A program made the position numbers and the translations under genes. 64,000 nt of DNA, taken from Macrostomum lignano (Eukaryota). Below the pieces are notes generated by a model. The model did not search any database. It worked only from the letters and a program-made list of their open reading frames with translations, and was not told the DNA's origin. Position 1 is the first letter of the stretch. Each line of letters opens with the position of its first letter. The stretch lies in the NCBI GenBank assembly GCA_002269645.1, contig NIVC01001816.1:1-64000 (forward strand), given 5' to 3'. Below are positions 7,918 to 44,546 of this stretch, piece after piece.

Positions 7918-10099
7918 TCAGCAATTTTGCGTCGGCTGATCCACGTCGACACCATTCGATATTTCCGATAGGAGAAGCTCTGGCGCTGCACTTTCAGCTT
8001 CTCCATAGGGCCCGCTCACTGCATCGGGCTCTTGTCGCTTCACTAACTGTAAAGTCTTGCCTCGTCTAGCAGCCGATGTCAAATTGATAAGGAATTCGCA
8101 CACCTCAATGACGCCAAGGAAACTCATGCCCAACCATAGTCCGATGATGCCACCTAGTTCTCCGAGCGCCTCCCAGATGCTGTATGCCGGTTCCTCTCTG
8201 TGCACATTGACTAGCACCTCGACTGGGTGTAGTTGCAGTTTAACAAAATTTTCTTTTACTAACTCCACTTGAGCTGTCCACTGGCCGTTCGAATCGAAGT
8301 CGAATAGATCGTGCGCTAATGGTCGATACTCAACTTTAGTTTTATTGCCGTCGCTAAGATTGTTCTTCGGTATGAGCAGTGCTGGAAGAATATCCTCCTC
8401 GATAATTTCTTGGATATCCGAATATCTTGGCCAGCTAGCTGTGCTATGAACAGATTTGTACTCGTTTTTCTGGCAGGCATAGAGCGCCTTTTCGCCGCCG
8501 TCAGTGCACTGTTGGATACTGTTGTAGTGCGGATCGCTGAACCTGTCCAATAGGCTATCATGACAGTTGACTCTTCGTAAATAGCGCTCCACCAGGCGAC
8601 TATTGGCGTGGCTAGATTGGATCGCTGTTTTACTGATATTAACTAGTTTGGCAGGATCCCCTTTCACCGATTTGACAATCTGGTTGACATCTAGCCCAAG
8701 ATCTAGTAACAAGCTAGTGCTGTTGTAGCACCAGCCTACTTGATCGCCACGATCAATGCTGTTAAACATTTTGTGATCTCGCTGCAGCGGTACTCGGTGG
8801 CTAGTGCAGCCGCACTCCTTGTATAGGTCTCGCTGTTGAAATTCGTAAATGCAGTCGCCAGGTTCGGCGTTGAATTCGCGAAACACAGGCCAACCAGATT
8901 CGTCTAAACTGGTTAGAAACCACACTTTTGGTTCAGTGTCAACACAGGGTGAGGATCCCTTGTTTAGTTTTCGTTCTTGTATCATACCTGTTGGTAGGTA
9001 AGTATAGTTTTTAAAGTAATGTTAATAGTTTCTCCCAGCTCACTTGTATCAAATTTCTAAGCGTGATTTAAAGACTAGCTTTTGTAAGTTTTATCAAATC
9101 GTAATCAAAGACTCCCTCGATAACATCTCGACGCGGGATCCTTTTCAGATCTAATTGTGTAATAAGAGCAAAGCAGTTAATTTTTTACCTACCTAATTCG
9201 ATCTCGCTAAACTGTCCGGCTCCCACAATCGAGCCAGCTGCTCTAAGAGCTGGGAATGCGTCTTTTTCGTGGAAGACAATTTTCACGCCTGCCGGTTCGT
9301 ACTCCGGTAGAAGAATTCGAGCAAACCAATCGTTGCCAGTTTCCCTTTTTTGACTAGTTGGTCGACTGCGGCTAGTTATGGTAGCGTTTTTGCCTGGAAA
9401 GATATTGTTCTTTTGGGCATTTCCTATGTACAGAAGCAGCAACAGGCCGTCTTCTGGTCTAGTAGTCTTTAAGTTTCGTTCCGGCGGTTGGAAGGTATAA
9501 CAGTTCAGATAATACGGATTCTGTAGTAAGGTGAACTGTAATCTGCAATCTGACTTGTGAAAGCTACATTTGATAACCAGCTCATCGAGGGCGAAACCTT
9601 TGTGCTTTGTTGGCATAGATGCATACTGGTGCTGTATTAGTCTTTTATGTAATAGAATTTCCTCTTTGTAGGGAAGCAAATGTACGGAATCGTATGTTTG
9701 ATTGTAAACCGGATACAAAAGAAGATCCATCGCTGTAAAGCCGTTTTGTATGTTTGGAAATTTTTCCGTTCCTCGTTCGTAGAATCGACTTGTTGTAGGC
9801 GTTTGCGAGCAGATTGTGACGTCGGGAAATTCGAATTCAGAACCTTCATGATCCAACGTGATAATGGTTGGCGATTCCAGAAATTGCATCGCATGAAATG
9901 TCAGATGCACTATAGTAGCAACGAGGCCAAGCACGAATACTGTTAGCCAAAAGATTTTCCGTTTTGATGTTTTCGATTGGTACATATGAGACAGGCCGTG
10001 TATAGTTGTGCGCTGACAGAATCCAGACACTTGGCAATAGAGATCGTTGCCTTTACCTAGACTATTCGCTTTGATTTGCTTACTGTCGTTGTTATTCAT
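7918..10099 (-). CDS. DEG/ENaC (ASIC/FaNaC-like) channel subunit 1; exons 10099-9193 and 8987-7918, 658 aa
   Basis: Pre-TM1 TTIHG motif, TM1, FPDVTICS, NPYYLNCYTF, Cys-rich thumb, TM2 GELGGIIGLWLGMS. Phase-1 intron; spliced length 1977 nt is divisible by 3. Confidence 0.93.
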
Positions 10100-11171: not shown

Positions 11172-11924
11172 ATGAATCGATTTAGGCAGCAAAGATACCA
11201 TGGCAACAATTGCCATCCAGCAGCAGCAGCTGCCGCTAACCCTGCTGCAGATGTAGGAGTAACCGAAGCAGGCGGCAATACTTCTCTAACTGGGCCAATC
11301 AATAACGGCTATAATAATTATCGAGGTGGCGGAGGAAGAGGCAGAGGCAGGGGAGGCGGAAGAGGCGGCTTCTCTGGCTATCGTGGTCGCGGAGGCGGCC
11401 GCGGTCGTGGTCGTGGCAGCGGTAGCGCCAGCGGAAGTTTCCTACGCCCGCGGCCTTTGCCTAAGCTTGATCGTCTTCGCTGCTCAGTATGCGAATCACC
11501 GGCGCCGAAGTACCGCTGCCCTGGCTGCCAGCTGGCTCGCTATTGTTCGACAGCTTGTTGCGCCCGTCATCGCGCCAGCTGCAATGCCAAAGAGGAGCGA
11601 GAGACTCGCGAATTTCTAGCCGAAAGAAGGCGACGTCAGCTAGCAGAAGAGCAGAAGAAGCAGCCGCCGCCCGCGCCTTGCGCCGAGCTGCTAGATCTCG
11701 GTCTGGACAGCGAAGATTATTTGGCAGCTGAAAATTTAGCCCGACTGCGGCAGTGCCCGCAGCTCATTAAGCTGCTAGGCAATCCGGAGCTGCGAGAGCT
11801 GCTCGTCCGACTTAACGGCAGTCGGAGACCGGAAGCTGACCTGGAGCGGGCGATGCAGCTGCCTCTGTTTGTAGACTTTGCCAACGTTTGCTTGGGAGTT
11901 ATTGAACCTGCGGATACTGATTGA
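11172..11924 (+). CDS. ZNHIT3: Zinc finger HIT domain protein 3 (Hit1) with RGG-rich N-terminal extension, intronless
   Basis: CSVC...KYRCPGC...YCSTACCARH zf-HIT, then C-terminal LENLARL...LLGNPELRELL...AMQLPLFVDFANVCL typical of ZNHIT3/Hit1. Confidence 0.85.
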   Translation: MNRFRQQRYHGNNCHPAAAAAANPAADVGVTEAGGNTSLTGPINNGYNNYRGGGGRGRGRGGGRGGFSGYRGRGGGRGRGRGSGSASGSFLRPRPLPKLDRLRCSVCESPAPKYRCPGCQLARYCSTACCARHRASCNAKEERETREFLAERRRRQLAEEQKKQPPPAPCAELLDLGLDSEDYLAAENLARLRQCPQLIKLLGNPELRELLVRLNGSRRPEADLERAMQLPLFVDFANVCLGVIEPADTD

Positions 11925-13458: not shown

Positions 13459-16400
13459 TTAATGCTTATTTAACGGCACGGAATTTTCGGCAGCTTCACC
13501 CTGTTGTCCGCCGGTGCCAGTCGCGGCCTTTGCGGCAGCAGCAGCGGCAGCAGCAGTGGCAGCTATCTCAGCCTTGGTTGCCCTAGCGTTGATGCGCCAC
13601 CAATTCCACCAGTCGGCGACCCGTTTGCAGTAAGCCAGGCCCACGTAGACAGCTAGTTCTAGCAGTTCGCAGAATGTCAAAAGCGATATGCCGCACCATA
13701 GGCCCAGAGCGCCGCCCATCTCGGCTAGTAGATTATTAGCCGTGTAGGAGATCTCCTCCTCGATCATTAGACCGTGTTCAACCGCACTGCCGATTGTTAT
13801 CCAAACTAGATTGCTTCTAGCCGCGTCGATCATTTGTTGCATTGTCTGCACAATACTGGCATTCTCCGTTGTTGAAATGGATCTGGCTTTCTCGTGTGTG
13901 TAGAATAGCATTGATAGGCCAAGCTCCGGGCTGACTGTCTTGGGAAAGCCTTTCAGCGTGAGCAGCTTTTGCAGGGTTGTCATGAATCCATGGTAGAATA
14001 TGTCCGGCCAGTATTTGTTAATCTGTTTAATGAAGGATAGGGTTGAGACTAAAATAATATTTTGTTCCATTCATTGGTAAGACAAATAAAAGTAATCATG
14101 AATGCTAGATTTCTACTGTTTTTACTTTTACTGATTTACTAATGCGTATGTTTATCTGGGTCGCTAGACATGTTATTCATTTGTCGCTTTTGAGTCATGT
14201 TCAAACCCTTTGAGTCGTGTTAACCATATCGCCTTTAATTTTCTAAAAGACGAGTGAGTGCATCACACAAGTTTTTGTCTTTCGAGAAGCTTCGAAGTCT
14301 TCTTTGGCTGAAAAACCACAATCTGCAAAAAGTTTGTTTGATGTAAGATCTAATCTGCTTTTTGTCGGATTTTCTTTCATTAGCTTATTAGTACGCGCAA
14401 ACTTTTCGATTGTTTCTTCGTGATCAATCTGACTGTACTTAGCATGTCGGTGCAGAGAAGGGCTTGTTTTAGTCATACCTTAATTAGTTGCGAGTGGTCA
14501 TTTGAATGAAATTAAAAAGCTTACCGTTGACGTCTACAACTTACCTGTTGGATGTTGTAGCGCTCAATCTCGCAATTGACAGTGCAATGATTCCAGCCTT
14601 CGCTGCTAATGTCTTCCAGACTGTTGATTAACTCGGCAGAACAGGCGTCGTCTTTAATAAGCCTGCGCATCGCCGGCCCATAGTCGTCCGTGCCGCTCTT
14701 ATTCCATTGGTAGCACCACGGATACTTTAGGTACTTGGTTGGTATTGGCAGAAAGTATGGTAGACACTCGCAACGTTTAATGAACTTCGCCAAAACGTAG
14801 TCATTGATGCAGGTTTCTTGTGTGTTTCGGAATTTCATCGTTAGGTTGTTAACATCGCTGCAAAAAAGTGCAATCAGTTCTTACATGTTTATAGTAGAAC
14901 ATCAAGTTTGAATGAGTTCTACCTAATCAGCATCCGGTCTCACATTTCACAAAAATTCGTGTTTTACGCAGACTCTGTCGGCGTATCTACTGATTTCTAT
15001 GTAAAGTGGATAAGGTATGGCTAATCTGTATAATCTCTTCTGTATGAGCATACAGATACTACATAGGTTTCAAAAGAGCGCTTAGTCTTATTAGGGAATT
15101 CATCTCGCATATCTTTCCAGTGAAGTTATAGACCTGCTTACCCATACGACGGATCTAGATTATCCATAGTTTCCGTCAGTTTGTTCTGTCTGTCCATCTG
15201 CCGGTCCTTTATTGGTCTACCCTCTGAAGACCAGGTAGGAATGAAATACTCAACGCTATCTTGATCGTCAGTTTGTTCCGAGACGATACAATTCGAATCT
15301 TTAACAGGTACGCGTTTGTTTCTCTCGTAAGCAATCTTGAACTCAATGTGGCTGCCAGTGTTAGCCGTGTGAGCCTGGCCAATTACTGGAAAATGTCCTG
15401 GTGGTAGGATAAATGTGTAATAACCGGCTTGCCGTAATTCTTCCCGACTAGCCGGTCCAGCTACTATGCCTTTTATGTGCTCATAGCTTGGTGTTGTCTG
15501 GCCTTTATAGCTGTGATCGTCCGCGAATAGTCGAATGTTTAACTTTCGTCTCGCTTGCTGCTTCGGGGTTAGGCCACGTAGGAAGCGTTCGCTTTTGAAC
15601 TTGAAACAAGCCCCGTAGTACGGATGGTGCAGGGTATCGAAGTCTGCCGAAGTGCACTTCACCGAGCCGAACTGGCAGTCCAGTATTTCTGACTTGCTCT
15701 CGTGACCAAGTAGTTTAGAAAGTATGTACGGCTTGTGTTTTATGTGCATAACTCCGTAGATGCTCTGTATGTTATTGGCTGAAATCCGTTGTATTTTTCG
15801 ATTAGTTAAGATGAATACGGTGTTGTCAGAGTAACTGCGAATATGGAATTACTTTTAACTACTTATTAAGCTTACCGTACATAGTTCTGCAAAGCTTACC
15901 GCAGCTGTGAATCGCGCAAAACTCCTTGCTAATGTTGCCGCCTTGACCGGACACCAGGCACCAAGGTTGATTTTCAATATCGGCAATCTCCTCGCCATCT
16001 ATAAATAGTGAGCTGTCGCTTCTCCATCCTAGCTGTGCAGACCTGTCTTTGTACAGAACGACAGCTGAACGGCACATATTGTGCATTTTGGACGTGTTCT
16101 TTATCTCTGGTAGAAAAACTTTATATTCAAAGTTGGCATTAAGATTTCTATAGTGCGCGTCAAGTCGTTTGTTCTGCAGATCGGCCCAGTTCAAGCATGG
16201 CTTGCCAGACTTTGAAATACTAATGTTTCCCATGTAGATTGGCTTGTTTGATTCCTGCGTGACGCACTCGGTCTCTGGACGATGGTTCATGGCTGAAAAA
16301 GTAAGATGCAAGTTCTAACCGTTCACAAACAGCTCTGAATTTAAAAAGATTTGCGATTTTTATCCATTTATATTTGAGCTATAATGAAAGAATTTATTTT

Positions 16401-17783
16401 TGTTTCAGTAGTTTTAGTGATATGTAAAAATGCGAACGTTTTGGTAAAGGAGCTTTAATATACAAAGGTTAACTGAAGTCTACTTCATTTGCGCTGAAAA
16501 AAATCTTCCCATTATCAAAAACTCACCGCAAACCGGCGTGCCACAGTAGTTAAAATCCACCTGACCTGAACTTGTTCTGTGAAAACAGCCTGGCCCTTGC
16601 GATTCAAAAGTGATGGCTTGGATAAGATTGTTTGTAGTGCCTGTAAAAGAGGGTTCGATTTATGAGAGAGGGGTGTCTTGTTTCAATCGATGTAGATGAA
16701 ATCAAAGCGTCACTTACCAATCGATTTCTTAAACGCATGTACAGTCCAATGATCGAATGGTGGCGTTCTGCATCGACTGTGATTCCAATCTGGCGCCAGC
16801 TTTGATATGTTGTTGTTAAATAACTGGTGCAGTTCGCGTCTAGCCTGACTCCAGTTAATACACCGAGAGCGTTTTGTCACGAGCGTGTTGAGGTCGTAGA
16901 CTAACGCTTCGCTTGTGACGCCTTCAAACTCCAAGCCAGCCAACGTGTGGCGACAAATTGTCAGATCTTCTGAAAAGGCATTAGTGGTTTGAATTAAAAT
17001 TTCATGAGCTCTTAGCGCAGTTTTTATTTTATAAATGCGCTTAGTGATTAATTAGTTTCTCCTTGCGCCTTATTGCATATAAATATGGCTTAAACGGCAT
17101 GTTAACCAACGCGGGAAGACTTAGCCAAAGCATAAAGTAACTTTATAGCTTAGTCACCGCTTGAGTAATAAAACTTTGCCTCAATAAACAAGCATATTGC
17201 TTGCATCATTACCATGATTGTACTGCAGCATGGCATCTGTTATGTTTCTCTGCCATTTGACCAACTCTTCATTAAGCGCTTTAACGTGTGCAGTCTCTTC
17301 GGGGTTCTCCACTTCATTTCGTAGTAGACTCATATAGTCTTGCATTTCAGTGGCCCTGTAGATGCTCGCGTACCGACCGGTGTTGCTAATAGGATTGAGT
17401 GCCTTACTGTAGCTGACGGGATTGGTGTTGCACAGATAGATGTCCGGATAGCGGAAGTCAATGTTTGGATCTAGCTTAGTTGATCGCGGCTGGTTAAAAA
17501 ACGTGCTCATCAGTAGTATTGTATGCAACGATAAACCAGTGTAAGCGCATAGGATGAACACTATCCATAGTAAGCGACCAACGTTGCCTCTTGTTGATGT
17601 CGTCAGTCTAGCCAGTCCATGGGCCGTTGTATAAGCTGCGAATGCCTTCAAGAAGCCTTCACTTTGATCTTTTCCGCTGCTGTCCTCCTCAACTAATTGT
17701 TGCATGCTTAATGGTGTTGTTTTGATAGTTTCTTGATCAGTGTGAGTTTGACTAGCTGTTACACGGCTCTGCTGGTGATGCAT
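13459..17783 (-). CDS. DEG/ENaC channel subunit 2 with inserted kringle; exons 17783-17213, 16969-16718, 16292-15900, 15778-15142, 14857-14545, 14022-13459; 909 aa
   Basis: TTAHG, TM1, YPDIYLCNTNP, LGHESKSEILDCQFG...HPYYGACF, thumb Cys, YWP, TM2 AEMGGALGLWCGIS. All introns GT-AG and phase-compatible; total 2730 nt is divisible by 3. Confidence 0.9.
15900..16292 (-). other. Kringle-domain exon (393 nt, phase 1-1) within channel 2
   Basis: C...YMGNISISKSGKPCLNW...HNMCR...PWCL...EFCAIHSC: six Cys and the YxG, SGxxC-xx-W, HNxCR, PWC and ExCxIxxC kringle motifs. Confidence 0.82.
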
Positions 17784-19020: not shown

Positions 19021-19260
19021 TACTATATTACAATCCCTAGCACTGTCGGTAGTGTAGTAATTAATACGCTTCTAACACAAATCGATAGAACATCTGGTAA
19101 TATTCCGCTCACAAAAGGCACGTTATGGTGAAATGGTTAAGGATGTAATTAAGCTAAGTAACACGATTCATTTATTTTTTGGTTTTATTTATTCTTACAA
19201 TAAATATTTCAGATTAGAAAGCCGATATAAATTGCAAAACATACGCGCAACAAAAATTAC

Positions 19261-22200
19261 GATGGCGAATTCGTCGTCCGATACAAGCCGGAAAAATGTA
19301 ATTGAATTAAACGACAACAAAGCCGGCATGACCGGCATAGATAAAGCCCGCATTAGTCAGATTATTGAAGAGGCGTCGCGAGGCTCAAAGTTCTACCAGC
19401 GTCAACAGGCTAAAAGGCAGGCTGATGCTAAACGAGCCGAAGAAACTCGACGGAAAATTGACGCGCTTTCCAGAGAAGCCCTGCAAGCTGGCGAGCGGGC
19501 CGGAGACGCCGAGATCCGACGGGCCGTGTCCGCGGCAGATTTCAGTCGGACACACGTCCACATCGACATGGACGCCTTCTATGCGGCTGTTGAAATGCTG
19601 GATAATCCAAGATTGAGACACGTGCCAATGGCTGTTGGCGGTAACGATATGCTTAGCACTAGTAACTATGCTGCTAGAAGGTTCGGAGTTCGAGCCGCTA
19701 TGCCAGGCTTTATTGCCAAGAAGCTTTGTCCGCAACTAGTCATTGTGCCCTGTCGGTTTCGGAGGTACGTATTGATTTTTTGTGATGATCTAGTAATCAA
19801 GTGGAAGCTTTCTATTGTTTTTTTTTCAATGAGCTCTGCCGTTCCTGTTAACGTTTAATTAAAAAATTGTCCAGAGATTTCTTGGAGAAATTTCTAGAAT
19901 TTTATTCCCTTTGAAGGATTACTTTTGAGACTCGATATTGCACTGGCCTGGATTTTCAATTGTTTGGCCTTTTTCCCTTTGTTTGACAGTCACGTGTTTA
20001 TCTAATCTTCAGAGCAGTTCATTTCGGTTTTTTAATTAATTTTTCTTCAGATACAAAGAAGTCAGCCGCCAAGTGCAAGCTGTTCTGGCTGATTACGATC
20101 CTCAATTTTCGGCTGCTAGTCTTGATGAAGCTTATTTGGACATCACCGATCATTTAGCTAATAGACAGGCAATCAATTTGCTACCCGGGCCTAAGGCCAC
20201 CTGTCAGTGTTCGATTTCGGATTGTCATGTCGAACAGAATTCGCCAGACTCGAATATCGCTTCAACTTTACAACCGGCTTTTTGCACCAACTCGAATTCA
20301 GATTCAAATGCGGACGCTTTGGCCGATGCAAGCTGTAGCGAAGATTCTGACTCGGATGCGGATTCGAATGTTAAGACGGACATGGATGCTGAGGTAGATG
20401 CGGATTCGAATGTTGAGACGGACGCGGATGCTGAGGTAGATGCGGATTCGAATGTTAAGACGGACGCAGATGCTGAGGTAGATGCGGATGTTAACGCAAA
20501 TCCGGATGCTGAAGTAGATGATGTTATCAAGGCAGTAGACGCTAACGATGAGTGCTTTGATCCCAAAGCGGGAACAGACGATCGCAATCGCGTCTGTCCC
20601 AATTGTCATCTCGCGGCGCTATCGGGTAGGCGCCAATTCGGCGCTAGCGCCACTGAAGCTGTAGCGGAATTGCGCTATCGAGTATTCATCTCCAGCAGCC
20701 TGACCGCAAGCGCTGGCATCGGGCCGAATCCTATGGTAGCCAAAATTGGTTCAGATTTTAACAAGCCCAACGGTCAATACCGAGTTGCCGGTAGCTCAGA
20801 CCGGGTGCTGGAGTTTATTAGGCAACTTCCGGTTAGAAAAGTGCCCGGAATTGGTCGCGTAACCGAGGCCTGGTTAAACAGTCTTGGTGTGTCAACTTGC
20901 CGGGATTTGTACGAACAGCGTGGCGCTTTGTACCACGCCTGCCGGCCGCTCACTTATCAATTCTATATGCGGGCCTGCCTTGGCCTTTCTGGTGGATTTG
21001 GCTATGGGGTAAGCTTCGCATCAATCAGGGATATTAACAATGGAAAGTTGTACGCACTTTGGCGCAGCGCCTTCGGCGATACCGTCTCGCAGCTAGCGCT
21101 GAAGCAATTGGCGCTGACTCCTGAGCCAATGCTGTTCGCAGGCACACACTCACACAGGATGTACAGCATCCCTGACTTTCTTATCTTCAGGCATTTAGGT
21201 TCGTCCTCGTGGCTGTGAATTGCATGATGTAGCAACTTGTGAAAGGAATAAGGCAGAGCTAGGCGGTGGGTGGTTCGCCTTCGGTTTGTTTCTCTTGTTA
21301 GCACTTGAGTTTCTTGGAGTGTAGAAGAAAGAAGCTTGGAGAAAAAAACTGATTTAGCTACTATATAATCAATATCTAGTATTAAATTTAAATTTGGCCT
21401 TCCGGAAATTTCTAGAATCATTTTAGTAAAGTAAAACAAATTCTATAGTTAGTATAGTCCGTACGGTATTCATATTTTGCATGATGATAAATTACAGTAA
21501 TTAAACATCTATTGAGTATAAATATTTGCTACGAAATTAGAAATAGCTACAGAGAGAAGTTTCTAGAATTTATCTCGTACTCTATCGCAGAATTTTATAC
21601 TCGTAGAAATAAACATCGTACGGTGTAGAAATTTCGCGAAGGTCACTACAATGACAGCCTCAGCCTCAAACTTCAAATCTATGTAGTCATACTAAATGCG
21701 CTTAAAGGAATAAATATATATCAGCGTTGGAATTTTCTATACGTTTGCTTAGGCCTAAAACTGTAGCAAAATGGCCCAGCCAGAGAGCTCAGTTGCCAGT
21801 CCAGATTTCTAAGTTTAGGCGTCCTTGTCCATCGTGACCATCTGTTGCATTCATTTGAGTTTATCTCTGACTCTGACGAATCTGTCAGCTTATCTGTAAT
21901 ATAGTATCTGCCTGTCAATTTTGGTGTATATCTTGCACTGTTTCGTTGATTTTCATTTTTGAAAATCTGGATGGTTTTTTTTCAAATAAGTATTCTAAAT
22001 ATAGCTTGAGTCTTGGTCTTGATTTAACAAAGGATCAAATTTAAAGGGGAATTCCAGTTGCTCATCGACACATGAAAGTTCAAGAACACAGGGTACTTTT
22101 ATATTTCGTCAATCCTCTAACGTACGCAATAGTTTTCATCGTGACTTTTAGGCTTTTGCGTGGAAATTGGCCAGTCTGGGGCTTGGCGTGCGATTCACGC

Positions 22201-23826
22201 CTCTAAGGGCCAAACCCCCAAGGCACAGAATGTGTACATACTCGTACCTGACGGAAATAGTATGCCTGAATACTTATCTGTGTACCTGTGTGTGGTCAAG
22301 TTCGTGAGCGCTCGTACAGCAGGATCCGTGCTATTTGGGACAAGAAGATTGTTGCGACAGTTTCAATAATTGCGTCCCAGAATTCAGATTCGCAGAAGGA
22401 ATCAAATCATAAAAGAAGCACAGAAAAGTGGGGTTAGTGGCAAAGAAATAAGAAGTCTGTTAGAGACTTATTGGAACGTCAGTGGTTTAGTCCTCTTTGG
22501 AGAATTTCTCCAGAAATATTTAGATATTCCTACTTTAAGTAGTTTTCAAGCGCGTTGCACAACATTACAGCAGTTTTTCTGTTTGAGTGCACAAAATATT
22601 AGTTCAAGCCAGGCTTGTATCTAAGCTGTAATACTTTGCTAGGCTTCTAGAAAGTATGCCAGAATCAGGAGGGCTCAGAAAAAGTGTAGCGGGTTATAAA
22701 TAAATTGGAGCATTGGAGAAGACCGGTAGGACTTGTTGATCACACACTGTATGTGGCAAGGACTATGGCAGTGCTGTTAAGTCACCACATGCATACGAGT
22801 ATTTATGCTGCTAGAAGCTACTTTAACAAAAAATGTTTTTGTTAAAAAATGCATTTTTCTCATCATATTCAGACAGAACAGTCAAGCAGCTCAGTTAGCA
22901 GCGAAACGGACCCCGATAGGAAAAGTGTCAGCGTTGAGCGAACCTTTCAAGCTACTGACAGTTTAACCTGGCTACTAGACGAGAAACTTCCGGAGCTGTG
23001 CGAATCTCTTGTGCGACACCTGACCAAGTCCGGCTTCCTTGGTCGAACGGTGACTATTAAATTAAAGCTGGACACGTTCGAGGTGCTCACTAGAAGTCAC
23101 GGCTTGCCCTCGGCTACGGATTCTGTGCAGGCGATCCAATCAGCTGCCGCGGCTTTGCTGCGCCAGGAGTTCCTGCCGGGACGTCCTGCACCGCGTATTC
23201 GCTTGCTGGGCGTCCGGGTGTCCTCGTTGACGCCTAGGAAGGCCGTCATTGCTGACTGCAGCAGCGGTGTCGGCAGTGCAGGACCAAAGCAGGCTCGGTT
23301 AGATGAGCTGCTCGTCAGATCGACAAAGACTATCGCTGAAACGTCAACAAAGACCAATACTACTGCGGCTGTTTGTTCCTCCAGTTCTAACGAAACTGTT
23401 TCAAAATCGTCTACGCCAGTGACGAGTTCAACATCAGAAAACGCATCGAAATTCAACTTAGTTGAATCAACGAGCGTTGAAACAAAGACTAGCGCCAGTA
23501 GTGCTAGCGAATCTGCACTGTCATGCCCAATCTGCTCAGCGTCGCAGCCAGGCGGCCTAGCGGGTCTCAATCGTCATCTGGACTTTTGTTTAAGTCGATC
23601 GGCTATTCAAACAGCCGTTAACGATTATTCAAACGATGGCTCGGCGTGCTTCACACCAGGCTCCAACTCTGCTAGTAGTCGGAAACGAATTGAAGCAGCT
23701 TCATCGTCTGGTAGACCTGCCGGTGGATCAGCATCCGGCGGTGGAAAACGAGCCAGGATTGCAGCGGATGGACGAACCGGCGTTGGTACTATTGAGCGTT
23801 ATTTTGCTAAGCCAAAGACTGACTAA
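19261..23826 (+). CDS. POLK: DNA polymerase kappa; exons 19261-19764, 20051-21008, 22873-23826
   Basis: LNDNKAGM N-clasp, HIDMDAFYAAVE, STSNYAARRFGV, SLDEAYLD, little finger RKSVSVERTF, UBZ CPIC...LNRHLDFC, C-terminal PIP-like IERYF. Splice phases consistent. Confidence 0.97.
21055..21260 (-). mobile_element. Degraded copy of SINE family 2 in POLK intron 2
   Basis: gcaggcacacactcacacaggatgtacagc matches 62730-62760. Confidence 0.65.
22190..22300 (+). mobile_element. Fragment of SINE family 2
   Basis: ccccaaggcacagaatgtgtacata matches the family's central motif. Confidence 0.4.
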
Positions 23827-33800: not shown

Positions 33801-36033
33801 CTGTAGCCTATATAAACTGCAGTCTGTAGCCTATAAAACTGCAGTCTGTAGCCTATATAACTGCAGTCTGTAGCCTATATAAACTGTAGTCTGTAGCCTA
33901 TGTAAACTGCAGTCTGTAGCCTATGTAAACTGCAGTCTGTAGCCTATATAAACTGCAGTCTGTAGCCTATAAAACTGCAGTCTGTAGCCTATATAACTGC
34001 AGTCTGTAGCCTATATAAACTGTAGTCTGTAGCCTATGTAAACTGCAGTCTGTAGCCTATGTAAACTGCAGTCTGTAGCCTATATAAACTGCAGTCTGTA
34101 GCCTATGTAAACTGCAGTCTGTAGCCTATATAAACTGCAGTCTGTAGCCTATGTAAACTGTAGTCTGTAGCCTATATAAACTGCAGTCTGTAGCCTATAA
34201 AACTGCAGTCTGTAGCCTATATAACTGCAGTCTGTAGCCTATAAAACTGCAGTCTGTAGCCTATAAAACTGCAGTCTGTAGCCTATATAACTGCAGTCTG
34301 TAGCCTATATAAACTGTAGTCTGTAGCCTATGTAAACTGCAGTCTGCAGCCTATATAAACTGCAGTCTGTAGCCTATGTAAACTAATCTGTATAAACTGT
34401 AGTCTGTAGCCTATCTAAACTGCAGTCTGTAGCCTATGTAAACTGCAGTCTGTAGCCTATATAAACTGCAGTCTGTAGCCTATGTAAACTGCAGTCTATA
34501 GCCTATATAATCTGCAGTCTGTAGCCTATGTAAACTGCAGTCTGTAGCCTATGTAAACTGCAGTCTGTAGCCTATGTAAACTGTAGTCTGTAGCCTATGT
34601 AAACTGTAGTCTGTAGCCTATGTAAACTGTAGTCTGTAGCCTATGTAAACTGCAGTCTGTAGCCTATATAACTGCAGTCTGTAGCCTATGTAAACTGCAG
34701 TCTGTAGCCTATGTAAACTGCAGTCTGTAGCCTATGTAAACTGCAGTCTGTAGCCTATGTAAACTGCAGTCTGTAGCCTATGTAAACTGCAGTCTGTAGC
34801 CTATGTAAACTGTAGTCTGTAGCCTATATAAACTGCAGTCTGTAGCCTATAAAACTGCAGTCTGTAGCCTATATAACTGCAGTCTGTAGCCTATAAAACT
34901 GCAGTCTGTAGCCTATAAAACTGCAGTCTGTAGCCTATATAACTGCAGTCTGTAGCCTATATAAACTGTAGTCTGTAGCCTATGTAAACTGCAGTCTGCA
35001 GCCTATATAAACTGCAGTCTGTAGCCTATGTAAACTAATCTGTATAAACTGTAGTCTGTAGCCTATCTAAACTGCAGTCTGTAGCCTATGTAAACTGCAG
35101 TCTGTAGCCTATATAAACTGCAGTCTGTAGCCTATGTAAACTGCAGTCTGTAGCCTATATAAACTGCAGTCTGTAGCCTATGTAAACTGCAGTCTGTAGC
35201 CTATGTAAACTGCAGTCTGTAGCCTATGTAAACTGTAGTCTGTAGCCTATGTAAACTGTAGTCTGTAGCCTATGTAAACTGTAGTCTGTAGCCTATGTAA
35301 ACTGTAGTCTGTAGCCTATATAAACTGCAGTCTGTAGCCTATGTAAACTGCAGTCTGTAGCTTATGTAAACTGCAGTCTGTAGCCTATGTAAACTAATCT
35401 GTATAAACTGTAGTCTGTAGCCTATCTAAACTGTAGTCTGTAGCCTATATAAACTGCAGTCTGTAGCCTATGTAAACTGTAGTCTGTAGCCTATGTAAAC
35501 TGTAGTCTGTAGCCTATCTAAACTGTAGTCTGTAGCCTATATAAACTGCAGTCTGTAGCCTATGTAAACTGCAGTCTGTAGCCTATGTAAACTGCAGTCT
35601 GTAGCCCATGTAAACTGCAGTCTGTAGCCTATATAAACTGAAGTCTGTTGCCTATATAAACTGTCTATAAGCCTGAAAAAACCTTTAAACTTATCAAGCT
35701 TCATCTCTATCGCAGGCCAAAGCTCAGCTGGCGGTAGTCTATTAGAATCCAATGCGCGACTCGACTGCGCACTTGTACTCTTGCGCGTCTTTCGCGTGTC
35801 CGCCGAGACGGCGACGGAAGCCTCCAGATCTGGCGGCAGAGAGTCTGAAGTGTTGAATAGCGCAACGGAACACTGCCTGTGCTCGTTGAAACTGAGGCCT
35901 GATCGACCGGATGTTTGGTACATCATGGGCTTGATTGAGGTGAGCTAGTGAATACTAACTAGCTAACTAGCTAGTTAACTAACTAACTAACTAACTAACT
36001 AGCTAACCAACTAACTGGCTGACTAACTAACTG

Positions 36034-36076
<43 letters not shown>

Positions 36077-37813
36077 GAGTAACTGACTAACTAACTAACT
36101 AACTAATTAACTAACTAACTAACTAACTAACTAACTGACCAACTAACTAACTAACAAACAAACAAACTAACTAACTAACTAACTAACTAACAAAAAAACT
36201 AACTAACTAACCAACCAAATACCCCCATTCAGACTCACAGAGAGAACCGGGCCTTGGCGCAGCACTGCTTCATCAAATCGCTGCAGCTGGACCCCGGCCA
36301 AGCCGATGTGTGGACCGCACTCGGCCTGTTCTACTGCCAGCTGTACAAACTGGAGCACGGCGCCGCCTGCTTCAACAAGGCGGTAGACGCGGATCCGACC
36401 TCGTCGGCAGCCTGGGCCGGATGCGCCGTGGCCGCGCGCCTGGACGGCAGGGCGGACCAGACCCGGGATCTGCTGCGGCACGCGTGCAGCCTGGCTAATC
36501 CGCCATTAGAAGTGAGCGAATTGGCTTTTGTGTAACACCCTAATCCTGCACCCTAATATCGAAGTAGCCTCTCTTTAATCTTTAAATCTATCAAAGTAAA
36601 GTCGGTCTCTCCCTTTAGACTACGATATCATAAAACCTTTGCCACAATAAAATTCATTACCTTACTACTATAATATTTCCACGCTAAAATATCACTCATA
36701 TAAACTTAAATCCAAGAAACTCTTCTCTTAATAAACGTCGACCTAGGCTCCGTCACCGTAAACTCATCAACTCATAAACTCCTCACTTTAATAAACTCCT
36801 CACCCATAAACTCCTCACCCATAAACTCCTCACCCATAAACTCCTCACCCATAAACTCCTCACCCATAAACTCACCACCCATAAACACATCACCCATAAA
36901 CTCCTCACCCATAAACTCCTCACCTATAAACTCCTCACCCATAAACTCCTCACCCATAAACTCCTCACCCATAAACTCCTCACCCATAAACTCACCACCC
37001 CATAAACTCCTCACCTCATAAACTCCTCACCCATAAACTCCTCAACCATAAACTCCTCACCCATAAACTCCTCACCCATAAACTCCTCACCCAAAAATTC
37101 ACCACCCATAAACTCCTCACCCATAAACTCACCACCCCATAAACTCCTCACCTCATAAACTCCTCACCCATAAACTCCTCACCCATAAACTCCTCACCCA
37201 TAAACTCCTCACCCATAAACTCACCACCCCATAAACTCGCCACCCAATAAACTCATAAAAATTTCCCCAACCCATAAACTCCCACTCCGCACATGCTCAA
37301 TATCCAACTGCCGATATGTATCGAAAAAACGAATCCATAAAACTTTCTCAAGGCCCTACGCGGTTTCGTTCGCTGCGTCGCTCTGGAAATCACTGGGCGC
37401 GAAGAATTGCCAACTGAAAACTCCCGACTAGCCGCCGACTTCATTGACGCCCTGAGTAGGCTGGCCGTTCCAGCGTCCGAGTCTGCTCAGCCTCTGGCCC
37501 AGACCCCCCGTGATCGCCTGGCCCTGCTCAACCACCGGCTATTGTGCCTGGAACGTCTCGGCCTGATGAAAGAGGCTGCCAATACCGCTTTGGACTTGTT
37601 CAGCCTCGCTTTGGATGACATGCGGCTTGCCGAGGGCGCGGCCGAAGCTGCCGCCGCCGCTCCTCCGGAGTCTTCGTTGGAGCTGCGAGCCACCGTGTCC
37701 AACTGCTTGAGGTGCCTCAGCCTGGCTGGTCGGTACGAGGAGGTGGCGGCCAATGCTGACTACCTGCGGGACTGCCTGGGCAGCGATCTTTCTGCTCAGG
37801 TGAGAGGCGGAGC

Positions 37814-37857
<44 letters not shown>

Positions 37858-37859
37858 AT

Positions 37860-37898
<39 letters not shown>

Positions 37899-37907
37899 TT
37901 CTGTCAT

Positions 37908-37949
<42 letters not shown>

Positions 37950-37950
37950 A

Positions 37951-38000
<50 letters not shown>

Positions 38001-38065
38001 TTGTCTGTGTGTCTGTCTGTCTGTCTGTTTGTCTGTGTGTCTGTCTGTCTGTCTGTCTGTCTGTG

Positions 38066-38124
<59 letters not shown>

Positions 38125-38133
38125 TTGTCTGTG

Positions 38134-38164
<31 letters not shown>

Positions 38165-38165
38165 G

Positions 38166-38205
<40 letters not shown>

Positions 38206-38265
38206 ATTCTGTCTGTCTGTCTGTCTGTCTTTCTGTCATTCTGTCTGTCTGTCTGTCTGTCTGTG

Positions 38266-38296
<31 letters not shown>

Positions 38297-38389
38297 TTGT
38301 CTGTGTGTCTGTCTGTCTGTCTGTTTGTCTGTGTGTCTGTCTGTCTGTCTGTTTGTCTGTGTGTCTGTCTGTCTGTCTGTTTGTCTGTG

Positions 38390-38444
<55 letters not shown>

Positions 38445-38445
38445 G

Positions 38446-38516
<71 letters not shown>

Positions 38517-38517
38517 G

Positions 38518-38548
<31 letters not shown>

Positions 38549-39751
38549 GTCCTGACGAAACGCAACAGCCGGCAACCCGAACCCATCCCAGGACCTGTGC
38601 TACATCGGGTTCAGCATAGCGAAGCTGTCAACCAGAGACGCACCGGACGCGTACGAACAGCTGGAGCTGGCATCCAGTTACTTCTGCTTGGCCGTGGAAC
38701 GGGTGACCCACAGCGAGCTGGCCGGTTCCGTGTGGGCCACCTTCATGGCGGCGGCGGAGCACCTGAGCATGGAAGACACCGCCAAAGACGCTATGCGGTC
38801 GGCGTTGGAGAGGGCGCCAGCAGATGTCAACGTTGTCCGCTGTGTACTGGCCTATGTGTCACACTACGTGCCGGCTATGGTGGGTGCTCTTGATATTGTT
38901 CCTAGTTTCCTAATCCTTTCTAGAAATATCACGTTTTCCTTGACATCCTGTGTTTTTCAGTTTATCCTATTTTTAGCTAATATCCCAGTTTCATAAATAT
39001 CCCCTTTTTTATAAATATCCCTTTTTTCACAGATATCCCATATTTTATAAATGTCACTTATTTCATAAATAACCCGTATCTCATAAATATCACATATTTC
39101 ATAAATACCACATATTTCATAAATACCCCATATTTCATAAGTATCATTTATTTCATAAATATACCATATTTAATAAATATCCCATATTTCATAAACATCC
39201 CATTTCCCACTACAGCAAAATAATCACTTGCAATTATTCCACAGGTGCCGCCAGGATTAACTATGCTTCGCGATCTGTTGCCCCCGGGAACCGCTGACTC
39301 AGATCCTCAGATTGGCCTAACCGAAGTAACCGAAGCTCTACTCTCCGGTGACTCAAACGTTGCCATAGCAACCGCTCTGCGGCTGACTCGCTGCTCAGCT
39401 GAGCAATCGCAAGCGGCTGGTTGGATAGCGGCTCTGCGCACTTTGGCGACGATGAAATTCGAGCACGGCTCGAAGCCAGTTTCGAGTTTGAAATCGTTGG
39501 GCTCTGTTGCACTTTTCGATCGATGCCTGCGCCAGCTGGACCGCATCAAAGTGCCAGCGGTTTCGGCAGGTTACTTGGGTCGCCAGTACCTGGACGAAGT
39601 GGCCGCTTGTCTGTCTGTCTCGCCTTTGCTAAAAGCTCTCTGTACTGGAAGTAACTTGAGGTCCGGAGTTCGAGTCTCGCTGAAGCATCTATGCGCGAGT
39701 TGGCCAAGCCATCCTGCTCTGTCGGACATTGTTGATGCTGTGCGGGTTTAA
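24803..39751 (+). CDS. TTC37: Superkiller complex protein 3 (TPR protein); exons 24803-25038, 26332-~26590/26602, 27559-27914, 28678-29423, 31362-31746, 32298-32465, 33202-33556, 35716-35939, 36233-36511, 37353-37799, 38592-38879, 39245-39751
   Basis: N-terminus [11 protein letters not shown]...[11 protein letters not shown]...QLLGWKA resembles TTC37/Ski3; TPR repeats throughout; exon phases join consistently. Confidence 0.85.
25245..25480 (+). repeat. 66-bp tandem repeat in TTC37 intron 1
   Basis: About 3.5 units cagccagtctatgtacacacgccactgataaaacccccacccc... Confidence 0.9.
26830..27235 (-). repeat. Inverted copy of the 66-bp repeat in TTC37 intron 2
   Basis: ggggtgggggttttatcagtggcgtgtgtacatagactggctgaaaaggg is the reverse complement of the intron 1 unit. 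Confidence 0.88.
27990..28510. repeat. ~23-bp minisatellite (ggctgggattcccctcattata) in TTC37 intron 3
   Basis: Visible array. Confidence 0.92.
29480..29690 (+). mobile_element. Copy of SINE family 2 in TTC37 intron 4
   Basis: ccccaaggcacagagactgtacatgcc...gggccgctgtacaccctgtgtgag matches the reverse complement of 62730-62820. Confidence 0.7.
29700..31300. repeat. ~31-36-bp minisatellite (ttagcgccaattaagcgccacagacaaagagg)
   Basis: Visible array. Confidence 0.95.
31760..32200. repeat. ~30-bp purine-rich repeat in TTC37 intron 5
   Basis: ggataatatatatgggaagaatgggagtg units. Confidence 0.85.
32530..33150. repeat. 14-bp minisatellite (cacacccattcccc)
   Basis: Visible array. Confidence 0.95.
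33590..35660. repeat. 21-bp minisatellite (aaactgcagtctgtagcctat-) with higher-order structure
   Basis: Visible array; variant blocks recur at ~34380 and ~35030. Confidence 0.96.
35950..36215. repeat. (ctaa)n microsatellite
   Basis: Visible. Confidence 0.95.
36760..37290. repeat. 15-bp minisatellite (cctcacccataaact)
   Basis: Visible. Confidence 0.95.
37810..38550. repeat. (ctgt)n microsatellite
   Basis: Visible; source of the CLSV/TDRQ pseudo-ORFs. Confidence 0.97.
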
Positions 39752-40069
39752 GAAACATAAAAAAACATTTCTTTACTTTGTTTTACTAATTTTTCCGGTC
39801 TAGCTACCTTGTGAGGTAAAATTATTCGATAAATAGTAAATAAACCCGTTCATTCGGTTTTTACGAGTGTTATTTGTTAGCTGTAATAGTTTGGATTTAT
39901 CATTAGTAAATTTTCTTAAATCTATAATTGCTCTTTATTATTAACATAGTAAACTAGTTATTTGTCTAATTTATAAGACTGTCTAATAGCCGGCCCTGTC
40001 AGCTCACTGCCTACAAACCCCTATTCTCATTATCAATACGTATTATTCACCTCGTTGCTTCCTTCATCA

Positions 40070-40575
40070 CCTATGTAACTACCCCATCACCTCACTGTCT
40101 ACCCCATCACCTCACTGTCTACCCCATCACCTCACTGTCTACCCCATCACCTCACTATCTACCCCATCACCTCAATATCTACCCCATCACCTCAATATCT
40201 ACTCCATCGCTTCACTGTCCACCCCATCACCTCACTATCTACCCCATCACCTCAATATCTACCCCATCGCTTCACTGTCCGCCCCATCACTTCACTGTCT
40301 ACCCCATCACCTCATCATCTACCCCATCACCTCATCATCTACCCCATCACCTCACTATCTACCCCATCACCTCACTGTCTACCCCATCACCTCACTGTCT
40401 ACCCCATCACCTCACTGTCTACCCCATCGCTTTACTGTCTACCCCATCACTTCACTGTCTACCCCATCACCTCAATATCTACCCCATCACTTCACTGTCT
40501 ACCCCATCACCTCAATATCTACCCCATCACTTCACTGTCTACCCCATCACCTTACTGTCTACCCCATCACTTCAT
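40070..40575. repeat. 20-bp minisatellite (accccatcacctcactgtct)
   Basis: Visible; the longer copy is at 46175-46865. Confidence 0.95.
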
Positions 40576-42146: not shown

Positions 42147-42189
<43 letters not shown>

Positions 42190-43926: not shown

Positions 43927-43970
<44 letters not shown>

Positions 43971-43972
43971 AT

Positions 43973-44015
<43 letters not shown>

Positions 44016-44024
44016 TTCTGTCAT

Positions 44025-44105
<81 letters not shown>

Positions 44106-44170
44106 TTGTCTGTGTGTCTGTCTGTCTGTCTGTTTGTCTGTGTGTCTGTCTGTCTGTCTGTCTGTCTGTG

Positions 44171-44229
<59 letters not shown>

Positions 44230-44238
44230 TTGTCTGTG

Positions 44239-44269
<31 letters not shown>

Positions 44270-44270
44270 G

Positions 44271-44306
<36 letters not shown>

Positions 44307-44366
44307 ATTCTGTCTGTCTGTCTGTCTGTCTTTCTGTCATTCTGTCTGTCTGTCTGTCTGTCTGTG

Positions 44367-44397
<31 letters not shown>

Positions 44398-44490
44398 TTG
44401 TCTGTGTGTCTGTCTGTCTGTCTGTTTGTCTGTGTGTCTGTCTGTCTGTCTGTTTGTCTGTGTGTCTGTCTGTCTGTCTGTTTGTCTGTG

Positions 44491-44545
<55 letters not shown>

Positions 44546-44546
44546 G

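What the first reader, a model, noticed from the sequence alone, without database searches (positions are those of the whole stretch)
15900..16292. Kringle domain shuffled into the finger region of a DEG/ENaC channel
Seen: a 393-nt exon with phase-1 introns on both sides encodes six Cys with kringle motifs (YMGNISISKSGKPCLNW; HNMCR; PWC; EFCAIHSC). It lies between the post-TM1 YPDIYLCN motif and the GH...C-x-F...YGxC motif. Established: that interval is the variable finger domain, which binds peptide in FaNaC and holds the protease-released inhibitory tract in ENaC; kringles are classic class 1-1 shuffled protein-binding modules. Inference: a channel gated or tethered by an extracellular protein or protease partner through a trimer of kringles. 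I do not know this architecture as characterised.
Basis: partly seen in the sequence, partly recalled or inferred. Interest (0 to 1): 0.9.

Follow-up and report, generated by a model that had tools for sequence, protein, structure and literature searches.

The report
Two kringles inside a flatworm sodium-channel finger
A flatworm (Macrostomum lignano) DEG/ENaC ion-channel gene carries two divergent kringle modules, not one, spliced into its outer "finger" region, so an extracellular partner may tether or gate the channel, although no channel of this design has been studied.

Summary
Window 16292-15900 (- strand) is a 393-nt GT-AG exon with phase-1 introns on both sides. It encodes six Cys with kringle motifs and lies between the two halves of an ASC (DEG/ENaC) domain.

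The kringle call rests on sequence. Pfam Kringle gives E 4.5e-7 but 30.5 bits, below the 34.3 cut-off. A profile of the family hits 81 PDB chains; the 60 listed are all kringle proteins. The structure test was weak.

With it, exons 2+3 form a first six-Cys kringle. The subunit is then 947 aa with two tandem kringles.

The gene belongs to a Macrostomum lignano subfamily. In several paralogs a WSC domain, on one phase 1-1 exon, sits inside kringle 1 exactly where the window gene has a 77-nt intron.

Predicted hemichordate and amphioxus DEG/ENaCs carry canonical kringles, LDLa, PAN and CUB modules at the same finger position. I found no paper on any of them.

Function is inferred. The canonical lysine-binding residues are absent. 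The most likely role is a glycosylated partner- or matrix-binding extension of the finger.

The parts
17213..17783 (-). Exon 1. Runs from the ATG through the cytoplasmic N-terminus with the HG motif (aa 54-55), TM1 (about aa 68-93), the post-TM1 YPDIYLC motif (aa 112) and the first finger segment. Ends in a phase-1 donor (ATCATG|gtaatg).
   Evidence: ASC profile positions 1-179 match aa 48-227
16718..16969 (-). Exon 2, phase 1-1, 252 nt. N-terminal part of kringle 1, carrying Cys1-3 at aa 196, 227 and 257, with the motifs CINW and RCRTPP.
   Evidence: paralogs hit it by tblastn (P0005 E 3.7e-4)
16641..16717 (-). Intron 2, 77 nt, phase 1. It splits kringle 1 in its Cys3-Cys4 loop. Paralogs carry a single phase 1-1 WSC exon at this position.
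   Evidence: paralog locus L001 exon map and phases
16527..16640 (-). Exon 3, phase 1-1, 114 nt. It is the C-terminal part of kringle 1 (GPGCFHRTSSGQVDFNYCGTPVC; Cys4-6 at aa 293, 307 and 312).
   Evidence: splice sites tcttttacag|GC and TTTGCG|gtgagt; paralog tblastn hits P0003 E 4e-5 and P0002 E 0.005; HGF and prothrombin kringles align across it into exon 4
15900..16292 (-). Exon 4, the finding. Phase 1-1, 393 nt. Encodes the whole of kringle 2 (Cys at aa 322, 345, 386, 424, 438 and 443), with long insertions in the Cys2-3 and Cys3-4 loops and three N-glycosylation sequons.
15142..15778 (-). Exon 5. The ASC domain resumes here with the end of the finger, the GH...C.F....C...YG.C motif and the palm/beta-ball region.
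   Evidence: ASC profile positions 141-455 match from aa 463
14545..14857 (-). Exon 6. Cys-rich thumb region of the ASC domain.
13459..14022 (-). Exon 7. Covers the ASC domain from the YWPD motif (aa 764-767) to TM2, then TM2 with the G-I-S filter motif (aa 871-873), the C-terminal tail and the stop codon.

Best explanation
The exon is the second of two divergent kringle modules built into the finger region of a DEG/ENaC channel subunit of the flatworm Macrostomum lignano. K1 is exons 2+3 and K2 is exon 4.

Shown:
- The gene has 7 exons and encodes 947 aa.
- The channel hallmarks are intact: HG motif, two hydrophobic TM segments, the post-TM1 motif, a Cys-rich thumb and a G-x-S filter.
- Every module boundary is a phase-1 intron.
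- The same boundaries recur in a paralog in which an extra WSC domain, on one phase 1-1 exon, is nested inside K1. The modules were therefore gained or lost by exon shuffling.

Inferred mechanism:
K1-K2 form a disulfide-rich, N-glycosylated extension of the extracellular domain, two per subunit and six per trimer. This extension binds an extracellular partner, either a matrix or secreted protein or a glycan. It does not use the classical lysine pocket, whose residues are missing here. In other DEG/ENaCs the finger sits on the gating interface. Partner binding, or force passed through the partner, would therefore bias opening, or would anchor the channel at a particular surface.

My confidence is about 0.9 in the architecture and about 0.3 in the partner-coupled gating or tethering mechanism.
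For: - Gene model: all splice sites are GT-AG, all phases are consistent, and the reading frame stays open for 947 aa.
- Channel identity: ASC 1.1e-41, 143.7 bits. HG, TM1, TM2 and GIS motifs are present.
- K2: Pfam Kringle E 4.5e-7. The K2 family profile hits 81 PDB sequences; the 60 listed are all kringle proteins, best 6.5e-11.
- K1: six Cys are invariant in all 7 aligned K1 sequences. hhalign of K1 against K2 gives probability 95%, E 4e-8. PDB kringles align across the end of K1, the linker and the start of K2, E 9e-6. All six Cys of both modules align to a canonical amphioxus kringle.
- Exon 3 is hit independently by paralog proteins.
- Family: the top phmmer hits are all M. lignano proteins with the same layout.
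- The paralog locus L001 has a phase 1-1 WSC exon at the window's intron-2 position, and phase-1 introns at the other module boundaries.
- The WSC fold is confirmed: Foldseek finds Kremen at 2.6e-5 and yeast Wsc1 at 1.4e-4.
- Predicted hemichordate and amphioxus DEG/ENaCs carry kringle, LDLa, PAN and CUB modules at the same ASC profile position.
- There are six N-glycosylation sequons across K1 and K2.
Against: - K2 scores below Pfam's gathering threshold, and K1 gets no Pfam Kringle hit at all.
- The K1 profile gives only weak PDB hits, E 0.06-0.9.
- The AlphaFold model of K2 is mediocre (pLDDT 67.9). Its Foldseek matches are not significant: prothrombin leads at E 0.02, probability 0.92.
- No transcript evidence for this locus was reachable, so inclusion of exon 3 rests on conservation, not on RNA.
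- Nothing tests binding, gating or expression.
- The lysine-binding residues are absent and both modules carry long loop insertions. They could have drifted to a purely structural role.
Confidence: 0.6

Rival explanations
1. Single-kringle isoform, as in the first reader's model and UniProt A0A1I8FXR6. Exon 3 is skipped, so only exon 4 is a complete kringle, and exon 2 contributes an unpaired three-Cys stretch.
For: Skipping keeps the reading frame because exon 3 is 114 nt and phase 1-1. The existing UniProt model uses the 16718/16292 junction.
Against: Exon 3 has good splice sites and is conserved in the paralog proteins that cover it (GPxCF...YC..P.C is invariant in 7 sequences). Without it, K1 is left with three Cys. 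The UniProt model also lacks exon 1, so it is an incomplete prediction and not evidence from a transcript.
Confidence: 0.1
2. Protease-controlled inhibitory module. Like the GRIP domain and inhibitory tracts in the ENaC alpha and gamma fingers, K1-K2 would hold the channel shut until a protease clips them out.
For: The insertion lies in the same general region of the fold, the finger. In vertebrates kringles occur in proteases and in protease-binding proteins (established knowledge). One KRSR motif lies inside K1 at aa 223.
Against: No paired polybasic sites flank the modules. The only basic motif lies inside a disulfide-locked loop. No sequence similarity to ENaC inhibitory tracts came up in any search. 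The modules' two ends are joined by the Cys1-Cys6 bond expected in kringles, so a single cut would not release them.
Confidence: 0.1
3. Structural, assembly or sorting role only. The kringles are degenerate spacers. They affect folding, subunit choice or surface targeting but not gating, and have no specific ligand.
For: Canonical lysine-binding residues are absent and both modules have long loop insertions. Paralogs are only about 20-40% identical in this region. The subfamily is seen only in M. lignano among the listed hits from 1.84 billion representative proteins.
Against: All twelve Cys and the flanking motifs are kept across paralog groups that are less than 50% identical. Unrelated lineages independently place binding modules (LDLa, PAN, CUB, F5/8C, kringle) at the same site. 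That pattern looks like selection for ligand capture.
Confidence: 0.2
4. Annotation or assembly artefact, or a pseudogene. On this reading the kringle exons belong to another gene, or the locus is dead.
For: No transcript for this locus could be retrieved. M. lignano assemblies are repeat-rich.
Against: Seven exons with consistent phases give one open 947-aa frame with no stops. The same order, TM1 then K1 then K2 then the ASC C-terminal part, is present in NCBI models of paralogs on other contigs (PAA82974.1, PAA86857.1, PAA47210.1).
Confidence: 0.05

Closest known systems
ENaC alpha/gamma finger with the GRIP domain (protease-released inhibitory tracts)
   Same: A lineage-specific insertion in the finger region of a DEG/ENaC subunit that regulates the channel from outside the cell.
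   Different: GRIP is not a mobile module family. It works through furin or prostasin cleavage at polybasic sites. Here the inserts are two disulfide-locked kringle-type modules, and I found no flanking polybasic sites.
Predicted mosaic DEG/ENaCs of hemichordates and amphioxus (Saccoglossus XP_077867543.1, Ptychodera XP_070544098.1, Branchiostoma XP_035696828.1)
   Same: Kringle domains, together with LDLa, PAN, F5/8C and Xlink modules, lie between the post-TM1 FPSVT.C motif and ASC profile position about 130, the same insertion point.
   Different: Their kringles are canonical (91-316 bits) and are combined with other modules. There is no close sequence relationship to the flatworm subfamily, so independent acquisition is likely. 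All are uncharacterised computer predictions.
Kremen1/2 (Kringle-WSC-CUB Wnt co-receptors)
   Same: They pair a kringle with a WSC domain in an extracellular binding unit. The paralog K1[WSC]K2 model's best structural matches are Kremen (E 2.6e-5), and the K1 profile's best (weak) PDB hit is the Kremen1 kringle.
   Different: In Kremen the WSC follows the kringle. In the flatworm paralogs it is nested inside a kringle loop. There is no CUB domain here, the window gene itself has no WSC, and the host protein is an ion channel.
C. elegans degenerins MEC-4/MEC-10 and the tether model (MEC-1, MEC-5, MEC-9 matrix partners)
   Same: DEG/ENaC channels whose extracellular domain carries extra family-specific Cys-rich regions and is thought to be coupled to extracellular matrix proteins.
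   Different: In nematodes the EGF/Kunitz and collagen modules are on separate proteins. Here binding-type modules are fused into the channel subunit itself.
FaNaC/HyNaC peptide-gated channels
   Same: Ligand recognition involves the finger region.
   Different: The ligand there is a small peptide binding a pocket of the ordinary finger, with no inserted module. M. lignano DEG/ENaCs tested so far did not respond to FMRFamide-type peptides (PMC9234716), and those genes were not identified as kringle-bearing.
Tmed-krg1 of the polyclad Theama mediterranea (PMC9229212)
   Same: A flatworm membrane protein with multiple extracellular kringles, predicted to have intracellular regions on both sides of a large ectodomain. 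It is specific to the anchor cell, RNAi abolishes adhesion, and an M. lignano homologue (RNA815_8153) is tail-specific.
   Different: It has six kringles described as lysine-binding. The paper never mentions a channel or ASC domain. Any relationship is untested.

Membership tests
DEG/ENaC (Pfam ASC, PF00858) | Significant match to the ASC profile above the curated cut-off | tested here: met
   143.7 bits against a cut-off of 23.6, E 1.1e-41. The match is in two pieces, aa 48-227 (profile 1-179) and aa 463-883 (profile 141-455).
DEG/ENaC (Pfam ASC, PF00858) | Two TM segments, N-terminal HG motif, post-TM1 [FY]P..[TY].C motif and a G-x-S filter in TM2 | tested here: met
   HG at aa 54-55, hydrophobic 19-mers starting at aa 68-75 and 865-874, YPDIYLC at aa 112, GIS at aa 871-873.
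DEG/ENaC (Pfam ASC, PF00858) | Trimeric, amiloride-sensitive cation channel activity | not testable with these tools
   Needs expression and electrophysiology.
Kringle (PF00051) | Profile match at or above Pfam's gathering score | tested here: not met
   K2 alone scores 30.5 bits against 34.3, although E is 4.5e-7. K1 gets no hit. These are therefore divergent kringle-type modules, not textbook members.
Kringle (PF00051) | Six Cys in kringle order, with the motifs Y.G....SG..C..W, N.CR, P.C and C....C | tested here: met
   K1 Cys at 196/227/257/293/307/312 and K2 Cys at 322/345/386/424/438/443. All align with the six Cys of a canonical amphioxus kringle. They are conserved across paralogs. The 1-6/2-4/3-5 connectivity itself cannot be tested here.
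Kringle (PF00051) | Homology to solved kringles detectable by profile search | tested here: met
   The K2 family profile gives 81 PDB hits at E<=1; the 60 listed are all kringle proteins, best 6.5e-11, single tPA K2 at 3.6e-6. The K1 profile gives only weak hits (E 0.06-0.9), though all are kringle proteins. K1 against K2 by hhalign gives 95%.
Kringle (PF00051) | Kringle three-dimensional fold | tested here: inconclusive
   The AF2 model of K2 has pLDDT 67.9. The top two Foldseek hits are prothrombin (probability 0.92 and 0.90), but E is 0.02 and 0.13 with TM about 0.35, and nothing reaches E<=1e-3.
Lysine-binding kringles (plasminogen K1/K4 type) | Asp55/Asp57 anionic centre, Arg71 cationic centre, Trp62/Phe64/Trp72 aromatic trough (numbering recalled from the plasminogen K4 literature) | tested here: not met
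   After Cys3, K2 reads RSAVVL and K1 reads RTPPFD, where the consensus is RNPD.D. K2 keeps only the Trp of PWC, and K1 has GPGC. The alignment was made by eye, anchored on the Cys.
WSC domain (PF01822) | WSC profile match | tested here: not met
   Absent from the window gene. Present in paralogs P0002, P0007 and P0013 above the cut-off and in P0005, P0011 and P0012 just below it, and confirmed by fold in P0002.

The most novel reading that the evidence does not exclude
The DEG/ENaC finger is a general docking site for shuffled extracellular binding modules. This flatworm subfamily (K1-K2, with WSC nested in K1 in its sisters) and the hemichordate and amphioxus mosaics would then be a previously unrecognised class of channels. 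Such channels would be gated or anchored directly by extracellular proteins or glycans, or by force carried through them. That would be a built-in version of the matrix tether long postulated for mechanosensory degenerins.
Probability: 0.3. Interest if true: 0.85.

Novelty: new variant of a known kind. Interest (0 to 1): 0.62.

Why it matters
DEG/ENaC channels are known to respond to protons, peptides, proteases and force, and the finger is where much of that diversity is thought to reside. A subunit with ready-made protein- or glycan-binding modules in the finger would give a directly testable case of a channel coupled to a macromolecular extracellular partner. That bears on the long-standing tether question in mechanosensation.

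The locus is also a clear example of exon shuffling in an invertebrate. It shows phase-1 boundaries at every module edge, and in paralogs a WSC exon dropped into an intron that splits a kringle. That gives a domain within a domain within a domain.

Practically, the public gene model for this locus is wrong: it lacks exons 1 and 3.

Tried and rejected
- Transcript evidence. An exact look-up of the UniProt model found no contig. My spliced model was not accepted for look-up. Inclusion of exon 3 therefore rests on conservation.
- Word-indexed homolog search. It found only the locus's own UniProt entry. The exhaustive phmmer search was needed to find relatives.
- Structure of the window's K1-K2. 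I therefore modelled K2 alone (weak) and a paralog's K1[WSC]K2 segment. The paralog model confirmed WSC and matched Kremen, but at pLDDT 65 it says little about the K1 fold.
- P0003 as a proxy for K1. I rejected it. It is a fragmentary prediction with a seventh Cys in K1 and no CR motif after Cys3, so part of it may be mis-annotated.
- Link to the adhesion protein Tmed-krg1 and transcript RNA815_8153. Only a tail-specific expression row was found, with no sequence. I leave this as an untested lead.
- Literature. Five searches on kringle with ENaC/degenerin/sodium channel, and on DEG/ENaC phylogeny, found nothing on kringle-bearing DEG/ENaCs. Three further searches followed the flatworm kringle and adhesion lead.
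- ENaC-like polybasic cleavage sites around the modules. Only one KRSR motif was found, and it lies inside K1.
Full report
**What is at the coordinates.**
- On the - strand, 16292-15900 is a 393-nt exon with acceptor actttttcag|CC and donor TGCG|gtaagc. Both flanking introns are phase 1.
- It encodes AMNHRPETECVTQESNKPIYMGNISISKSGKPCLNW...HNMCRSAVV...QPWCLVSGQGGNISKEFCAIHSC, with six Cys.

**Gene model.**
- I assembled a seven-exon gene on the - strand: 17783-17213, 16969-16718, 16640-16527, 16292-15900, 15778-15142, 14857-14545 and 14022-13459.
- Every intron is GT-AG and the phases are consistent. The open frame is 947 aa.
- The only hit of the word-indexed search was UniRef A0A1I8FXR6, "Kringle domain-containing protein", Macrostomum lignano, 718 aa. 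It is identical to my model except that it lacks exon 1 and exon 3.
- So the window is M. lignano DNA.

**Exon 3 and the first kringle.**
- Exon 3 is 114 nt, phase 1-1, and has strong splice sites. It encodes GTTNNLIQAITFESQGPGCFHRTSSGQVDFNYCGTPVC.
- This is the "P-W-C-[FY] ... Y-C-x-x-P-x-C" end of a kringle.
- Exon 2 supplies the start: C-x30-CINW ... HSRCRTPP.
- Together they give six Cys, at aa 196, 227, 257, 293, 307 and 312.
- Evidence that exon 3 is coding:
  - Paralog proteins hit it independently by tblastn (P0003 E 4e-5, P0002 E 0.005).
  - GP.CF...C..P.C is invariant in seven family members.
  - A phmmer search of PDB aligns HGF and prothrombin tandem kringles continuously across the end of exon 3, the linker and the start of exon 4 (E 9e-6).
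  - Without exon 3, K1 keeps only three Cys.
- K1 and K2 profiles align to each other with 95% probability, E 4e-8.
- The subunit therefore has two tandem kringle-type modules.

**How good is the kringle call?**
- For K2:
  - Pfam Kringle gives E 4.5e-7 but 30.5 bits, under the 34.3 gathering score.
  - A profile of K2 and its paralogs hits 81 PDB sequences at E<=1. The 60 listed are all kringle proteins (HGF, tPA, plasminogen, ROR1/2, prothrombin, apo(a), uPA). The best is 6.5e-11 and a single tPA kringle scores 3.6e-6.
- For K1:
  - Pfam finds nothing.
  - The family profile gives only weak PDB hits (E 0.06-0.9), though all are kringle proteins, led by Kremen1.
- Both modules align on all six Cys with a canonical amphioxus kringle. 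They carry insertions of about 25 aa in the Cys3-Cys4 loop. K1 has a further insertion in the Cys1-2 loop and K2 in the Cys2-3 loop.
- The structural test was inconclusive.
  - The AlphaFold2 model of K2, built from 11 sequences, reached pLDDT 67.9.
  - Its two best Foldseek matches are prothrombin (probability 0.92 and 0.90), but at E 0.02 and 0.13.
- I therefore call these divergent kringle-type modules, on sequence evidence.
- The residues that make the lysine-binding site in plasminogen-type kringles are not conserved (by-eye alignment anchored on the Cys; residue roles from the literature). Each module has three N-glycosylation sequons.

**Position in the channel.**
- The ASC profile matches in two pieces: aa 48-227 to profile 1-179, and aa 463-883 to profile 141-455.
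- K1-K2 (aa 191-443) lie between YPDIYLC and GH...C.F....C...YG.C, which is the finger interval.
- The HG motif, two hydrophobic segments and a G-I-S filter are intact, so this looks like a working channel subunit.
- A second DEG/ENaC gene in the window (10099-7921, - strand) has an uninterrupted ASC match and about 55 aa in that interval, encoded in one exon.

**Family context.**
- An exhaustive phmmer search of 1.84 billion representative proteins gave 753 hits.
- Those that align through the kringle region are all M. lignano proteins. They fall into at least five groups that are less than 50% identical to each other, several of them NCBI models on other contigs.
- The alignment shows the same order throughout: TM1, K1, K2, then the C-terminal part of ASC.
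- Three of these proteins have a WSC domain above Pfam's cut-off and three more just below it. It sits between Cys3 and Cys4 of K1.
- I fetched the locus of one such paralog (PAA82974.1, L001) and mapped its exons.
  - The N-terminal part of K1, the WSC domain and the C-terminal part of K1 are three consecutive exons.
  - WSC is a single phase 1-1 exon.
  - The boundaries exon2|K1, K1-N|WSC, WSC|K1-C, K1|K2 and K2|ASC are all phase 1. Apart from the WSC exon itself, these boundaries lie at the same positions as the window's introns 1-4.
- The window's 77-nt intron 2 is therefore the slot that holds WSC in the sister genes.
- An AlphaFold2 model of that paralog's K1[WSC]K2 segment (pLDDT 65.2) matched Kremen (E 2.6e-5, about 188 aligned columns) and the yeast Wsc1 sensor domain (E 1.4e-4, TM 0.72). 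That confirms the WSC fold.

**Beyond flatworms.**
- Among the long ASC hits, predicted proteins of several deuterostomes have HG, TM1 and FPSVT.C, followed by blocks of shuffled modules, followed by ASC from profile position about 130 and a G-x-S TM2. The species are Saccoglossus kowalevskii, Ptychodera flava and three Branchiostoma species.
- Examples:
  - 4 LDLa + 4-5 canonical kringles + 5 PAN (both hemichordates)
  - Xlink + F5/8C + kringle (amphioxus, same length in three species)
  - CUB + TSP1 + LDLa
  - 8 LDLa
- The finger is therefore a recurrent insertion site, and kringles have been placed there at least twice.
- All of these proteins are named "uncharacterized" or carry only an automatic name.

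**Literature.**
- Eight full-text searches were run. The five aimed at this question found no paper describing a kringle-bearing DEG/ENaC.
- One lead came from PMC9229212. It describes Tmed-krg1, a six-kringle membrane protein of a polyclad flatworm.
  - The protein is predicted to have intracellular regions on both sides of a roughly 1060-aa ectodomain.
  - It is specific to the anchor cell and is required for adhesion.
  - A tail-specific M. lignano homologue exists.
- That paper never mentions a channel domain, and I could not obtain the sequence. Any link is untested.

**Mechanism.**
- Shown: the architecture, the exon-shuffling signature and the conservation of all Cys.
- Inferred: K1-K2 form a glycosylated, disulfide-rich binding extension, six per trimer. 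It would couple an extracellular protein, glycan or matrix element to the finger and so to gating or localisation.
- The WSC domain in sister genes points towards matrix or glycan contact and not towards the classical lysine pocket. WSC is a glycan-binding module and the sensor domain of a yeast wall-stress sensor. The LDLa, PAN and CUB modules in the deuterostome mosaics point the same way.
- Rivals:
  - a protease-released inhibitory module, ENaC-like; I found no flanking polybasic sites
  - a purely structural role
  - an exon-3-skipping single-kringle isoform
  - an artefact or pseudogene, which is unlikely given the open 947-aa frame and the paralogs

**Verdict.**
The functional reading is plausible but untested.
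- The architecture is uncharacterised, but it is not unique and is already auto-annotated.
- I rate it a new variant of a known kind, with interest 0.62.

Noticed in passing
window 7921-10099 (- strand): A second DEG/ENaC gene, about 20% identical to the kringle gene. It has at least two coding exons (10099-9188 and 9021-7921). Its ASC match is uninterrupted (185.7 bits) and it has no inserted module. Its finger interval is about 55 aa, encoded in one exon.
   Followed up: partly
window 11172-11924 (+ strand): An ORF with zf-HIT and ZNHIT3_C domains lies between the two channel genes on the opposite strand.
   Followed up: partly
window 19133-23826 (+ strand): Three ORFs carry the IMS, IMS_HHH and IMS_C domains. 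This is a Y-family (translesion) DNA polymerase gene just upstream of the kringle-channel gene, transcribed divergently.
   Followed up: partly
window 46901-47755 (+ strand): A 284-aa ORF with a short-chain dehydrogenase (adh_short) domain is embedded in satellite-rich sequence.
   Followed up: no
window 26000-64000, e.g. 35954-40574 and 42067-46866: The right-hand half of the window is dominated by many different tandem-repeat arrays. A block of five arrays (ACTA, a 15-mer, CTGT, an 18-mer and a 20-mer) recurs in the same order about 6.1 kb downstream, which indicates a recent segmental tandem duplication.
   Followed up: no
window 16527-16640 and 17213-17783: The public model for this locus (UniRef A0A1I8FXR6, 718 aa) lacks exon 1 (N-terminus, TM1) and exon 3 (the second half of kringle 1). 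It should be corrected to 947 aa.
   Followed up: yes
L001 13063-19782: In the paralog BOX15_Mlig007204g1, the 6.7-kb gap between two K2 exons has no GT-AG boundaries, and both edges share the sequence TGTAC. This may be a transposon insertion or an assembly problem in that copy.
   Followed up: no
L001 11592-11894; proteins P0002, P0005, P0007, P0011, P0012, P0013: In sister genes a WSC domain, encoded by one phase 1-1 exon, is nested inside the Cys3-Cys4 loop of kringle 1. That kringle is itself nested in the ASC finger, giving three levels of domain nesting.
   Followed up: yes
protein P0092 (M. lignano, 1562 aa): Another M. lignano ASC protein model has about 500 residues before the channel domain and an Ig domain near its C-terminus. 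It may be a fused gene model.
   Followed up: no
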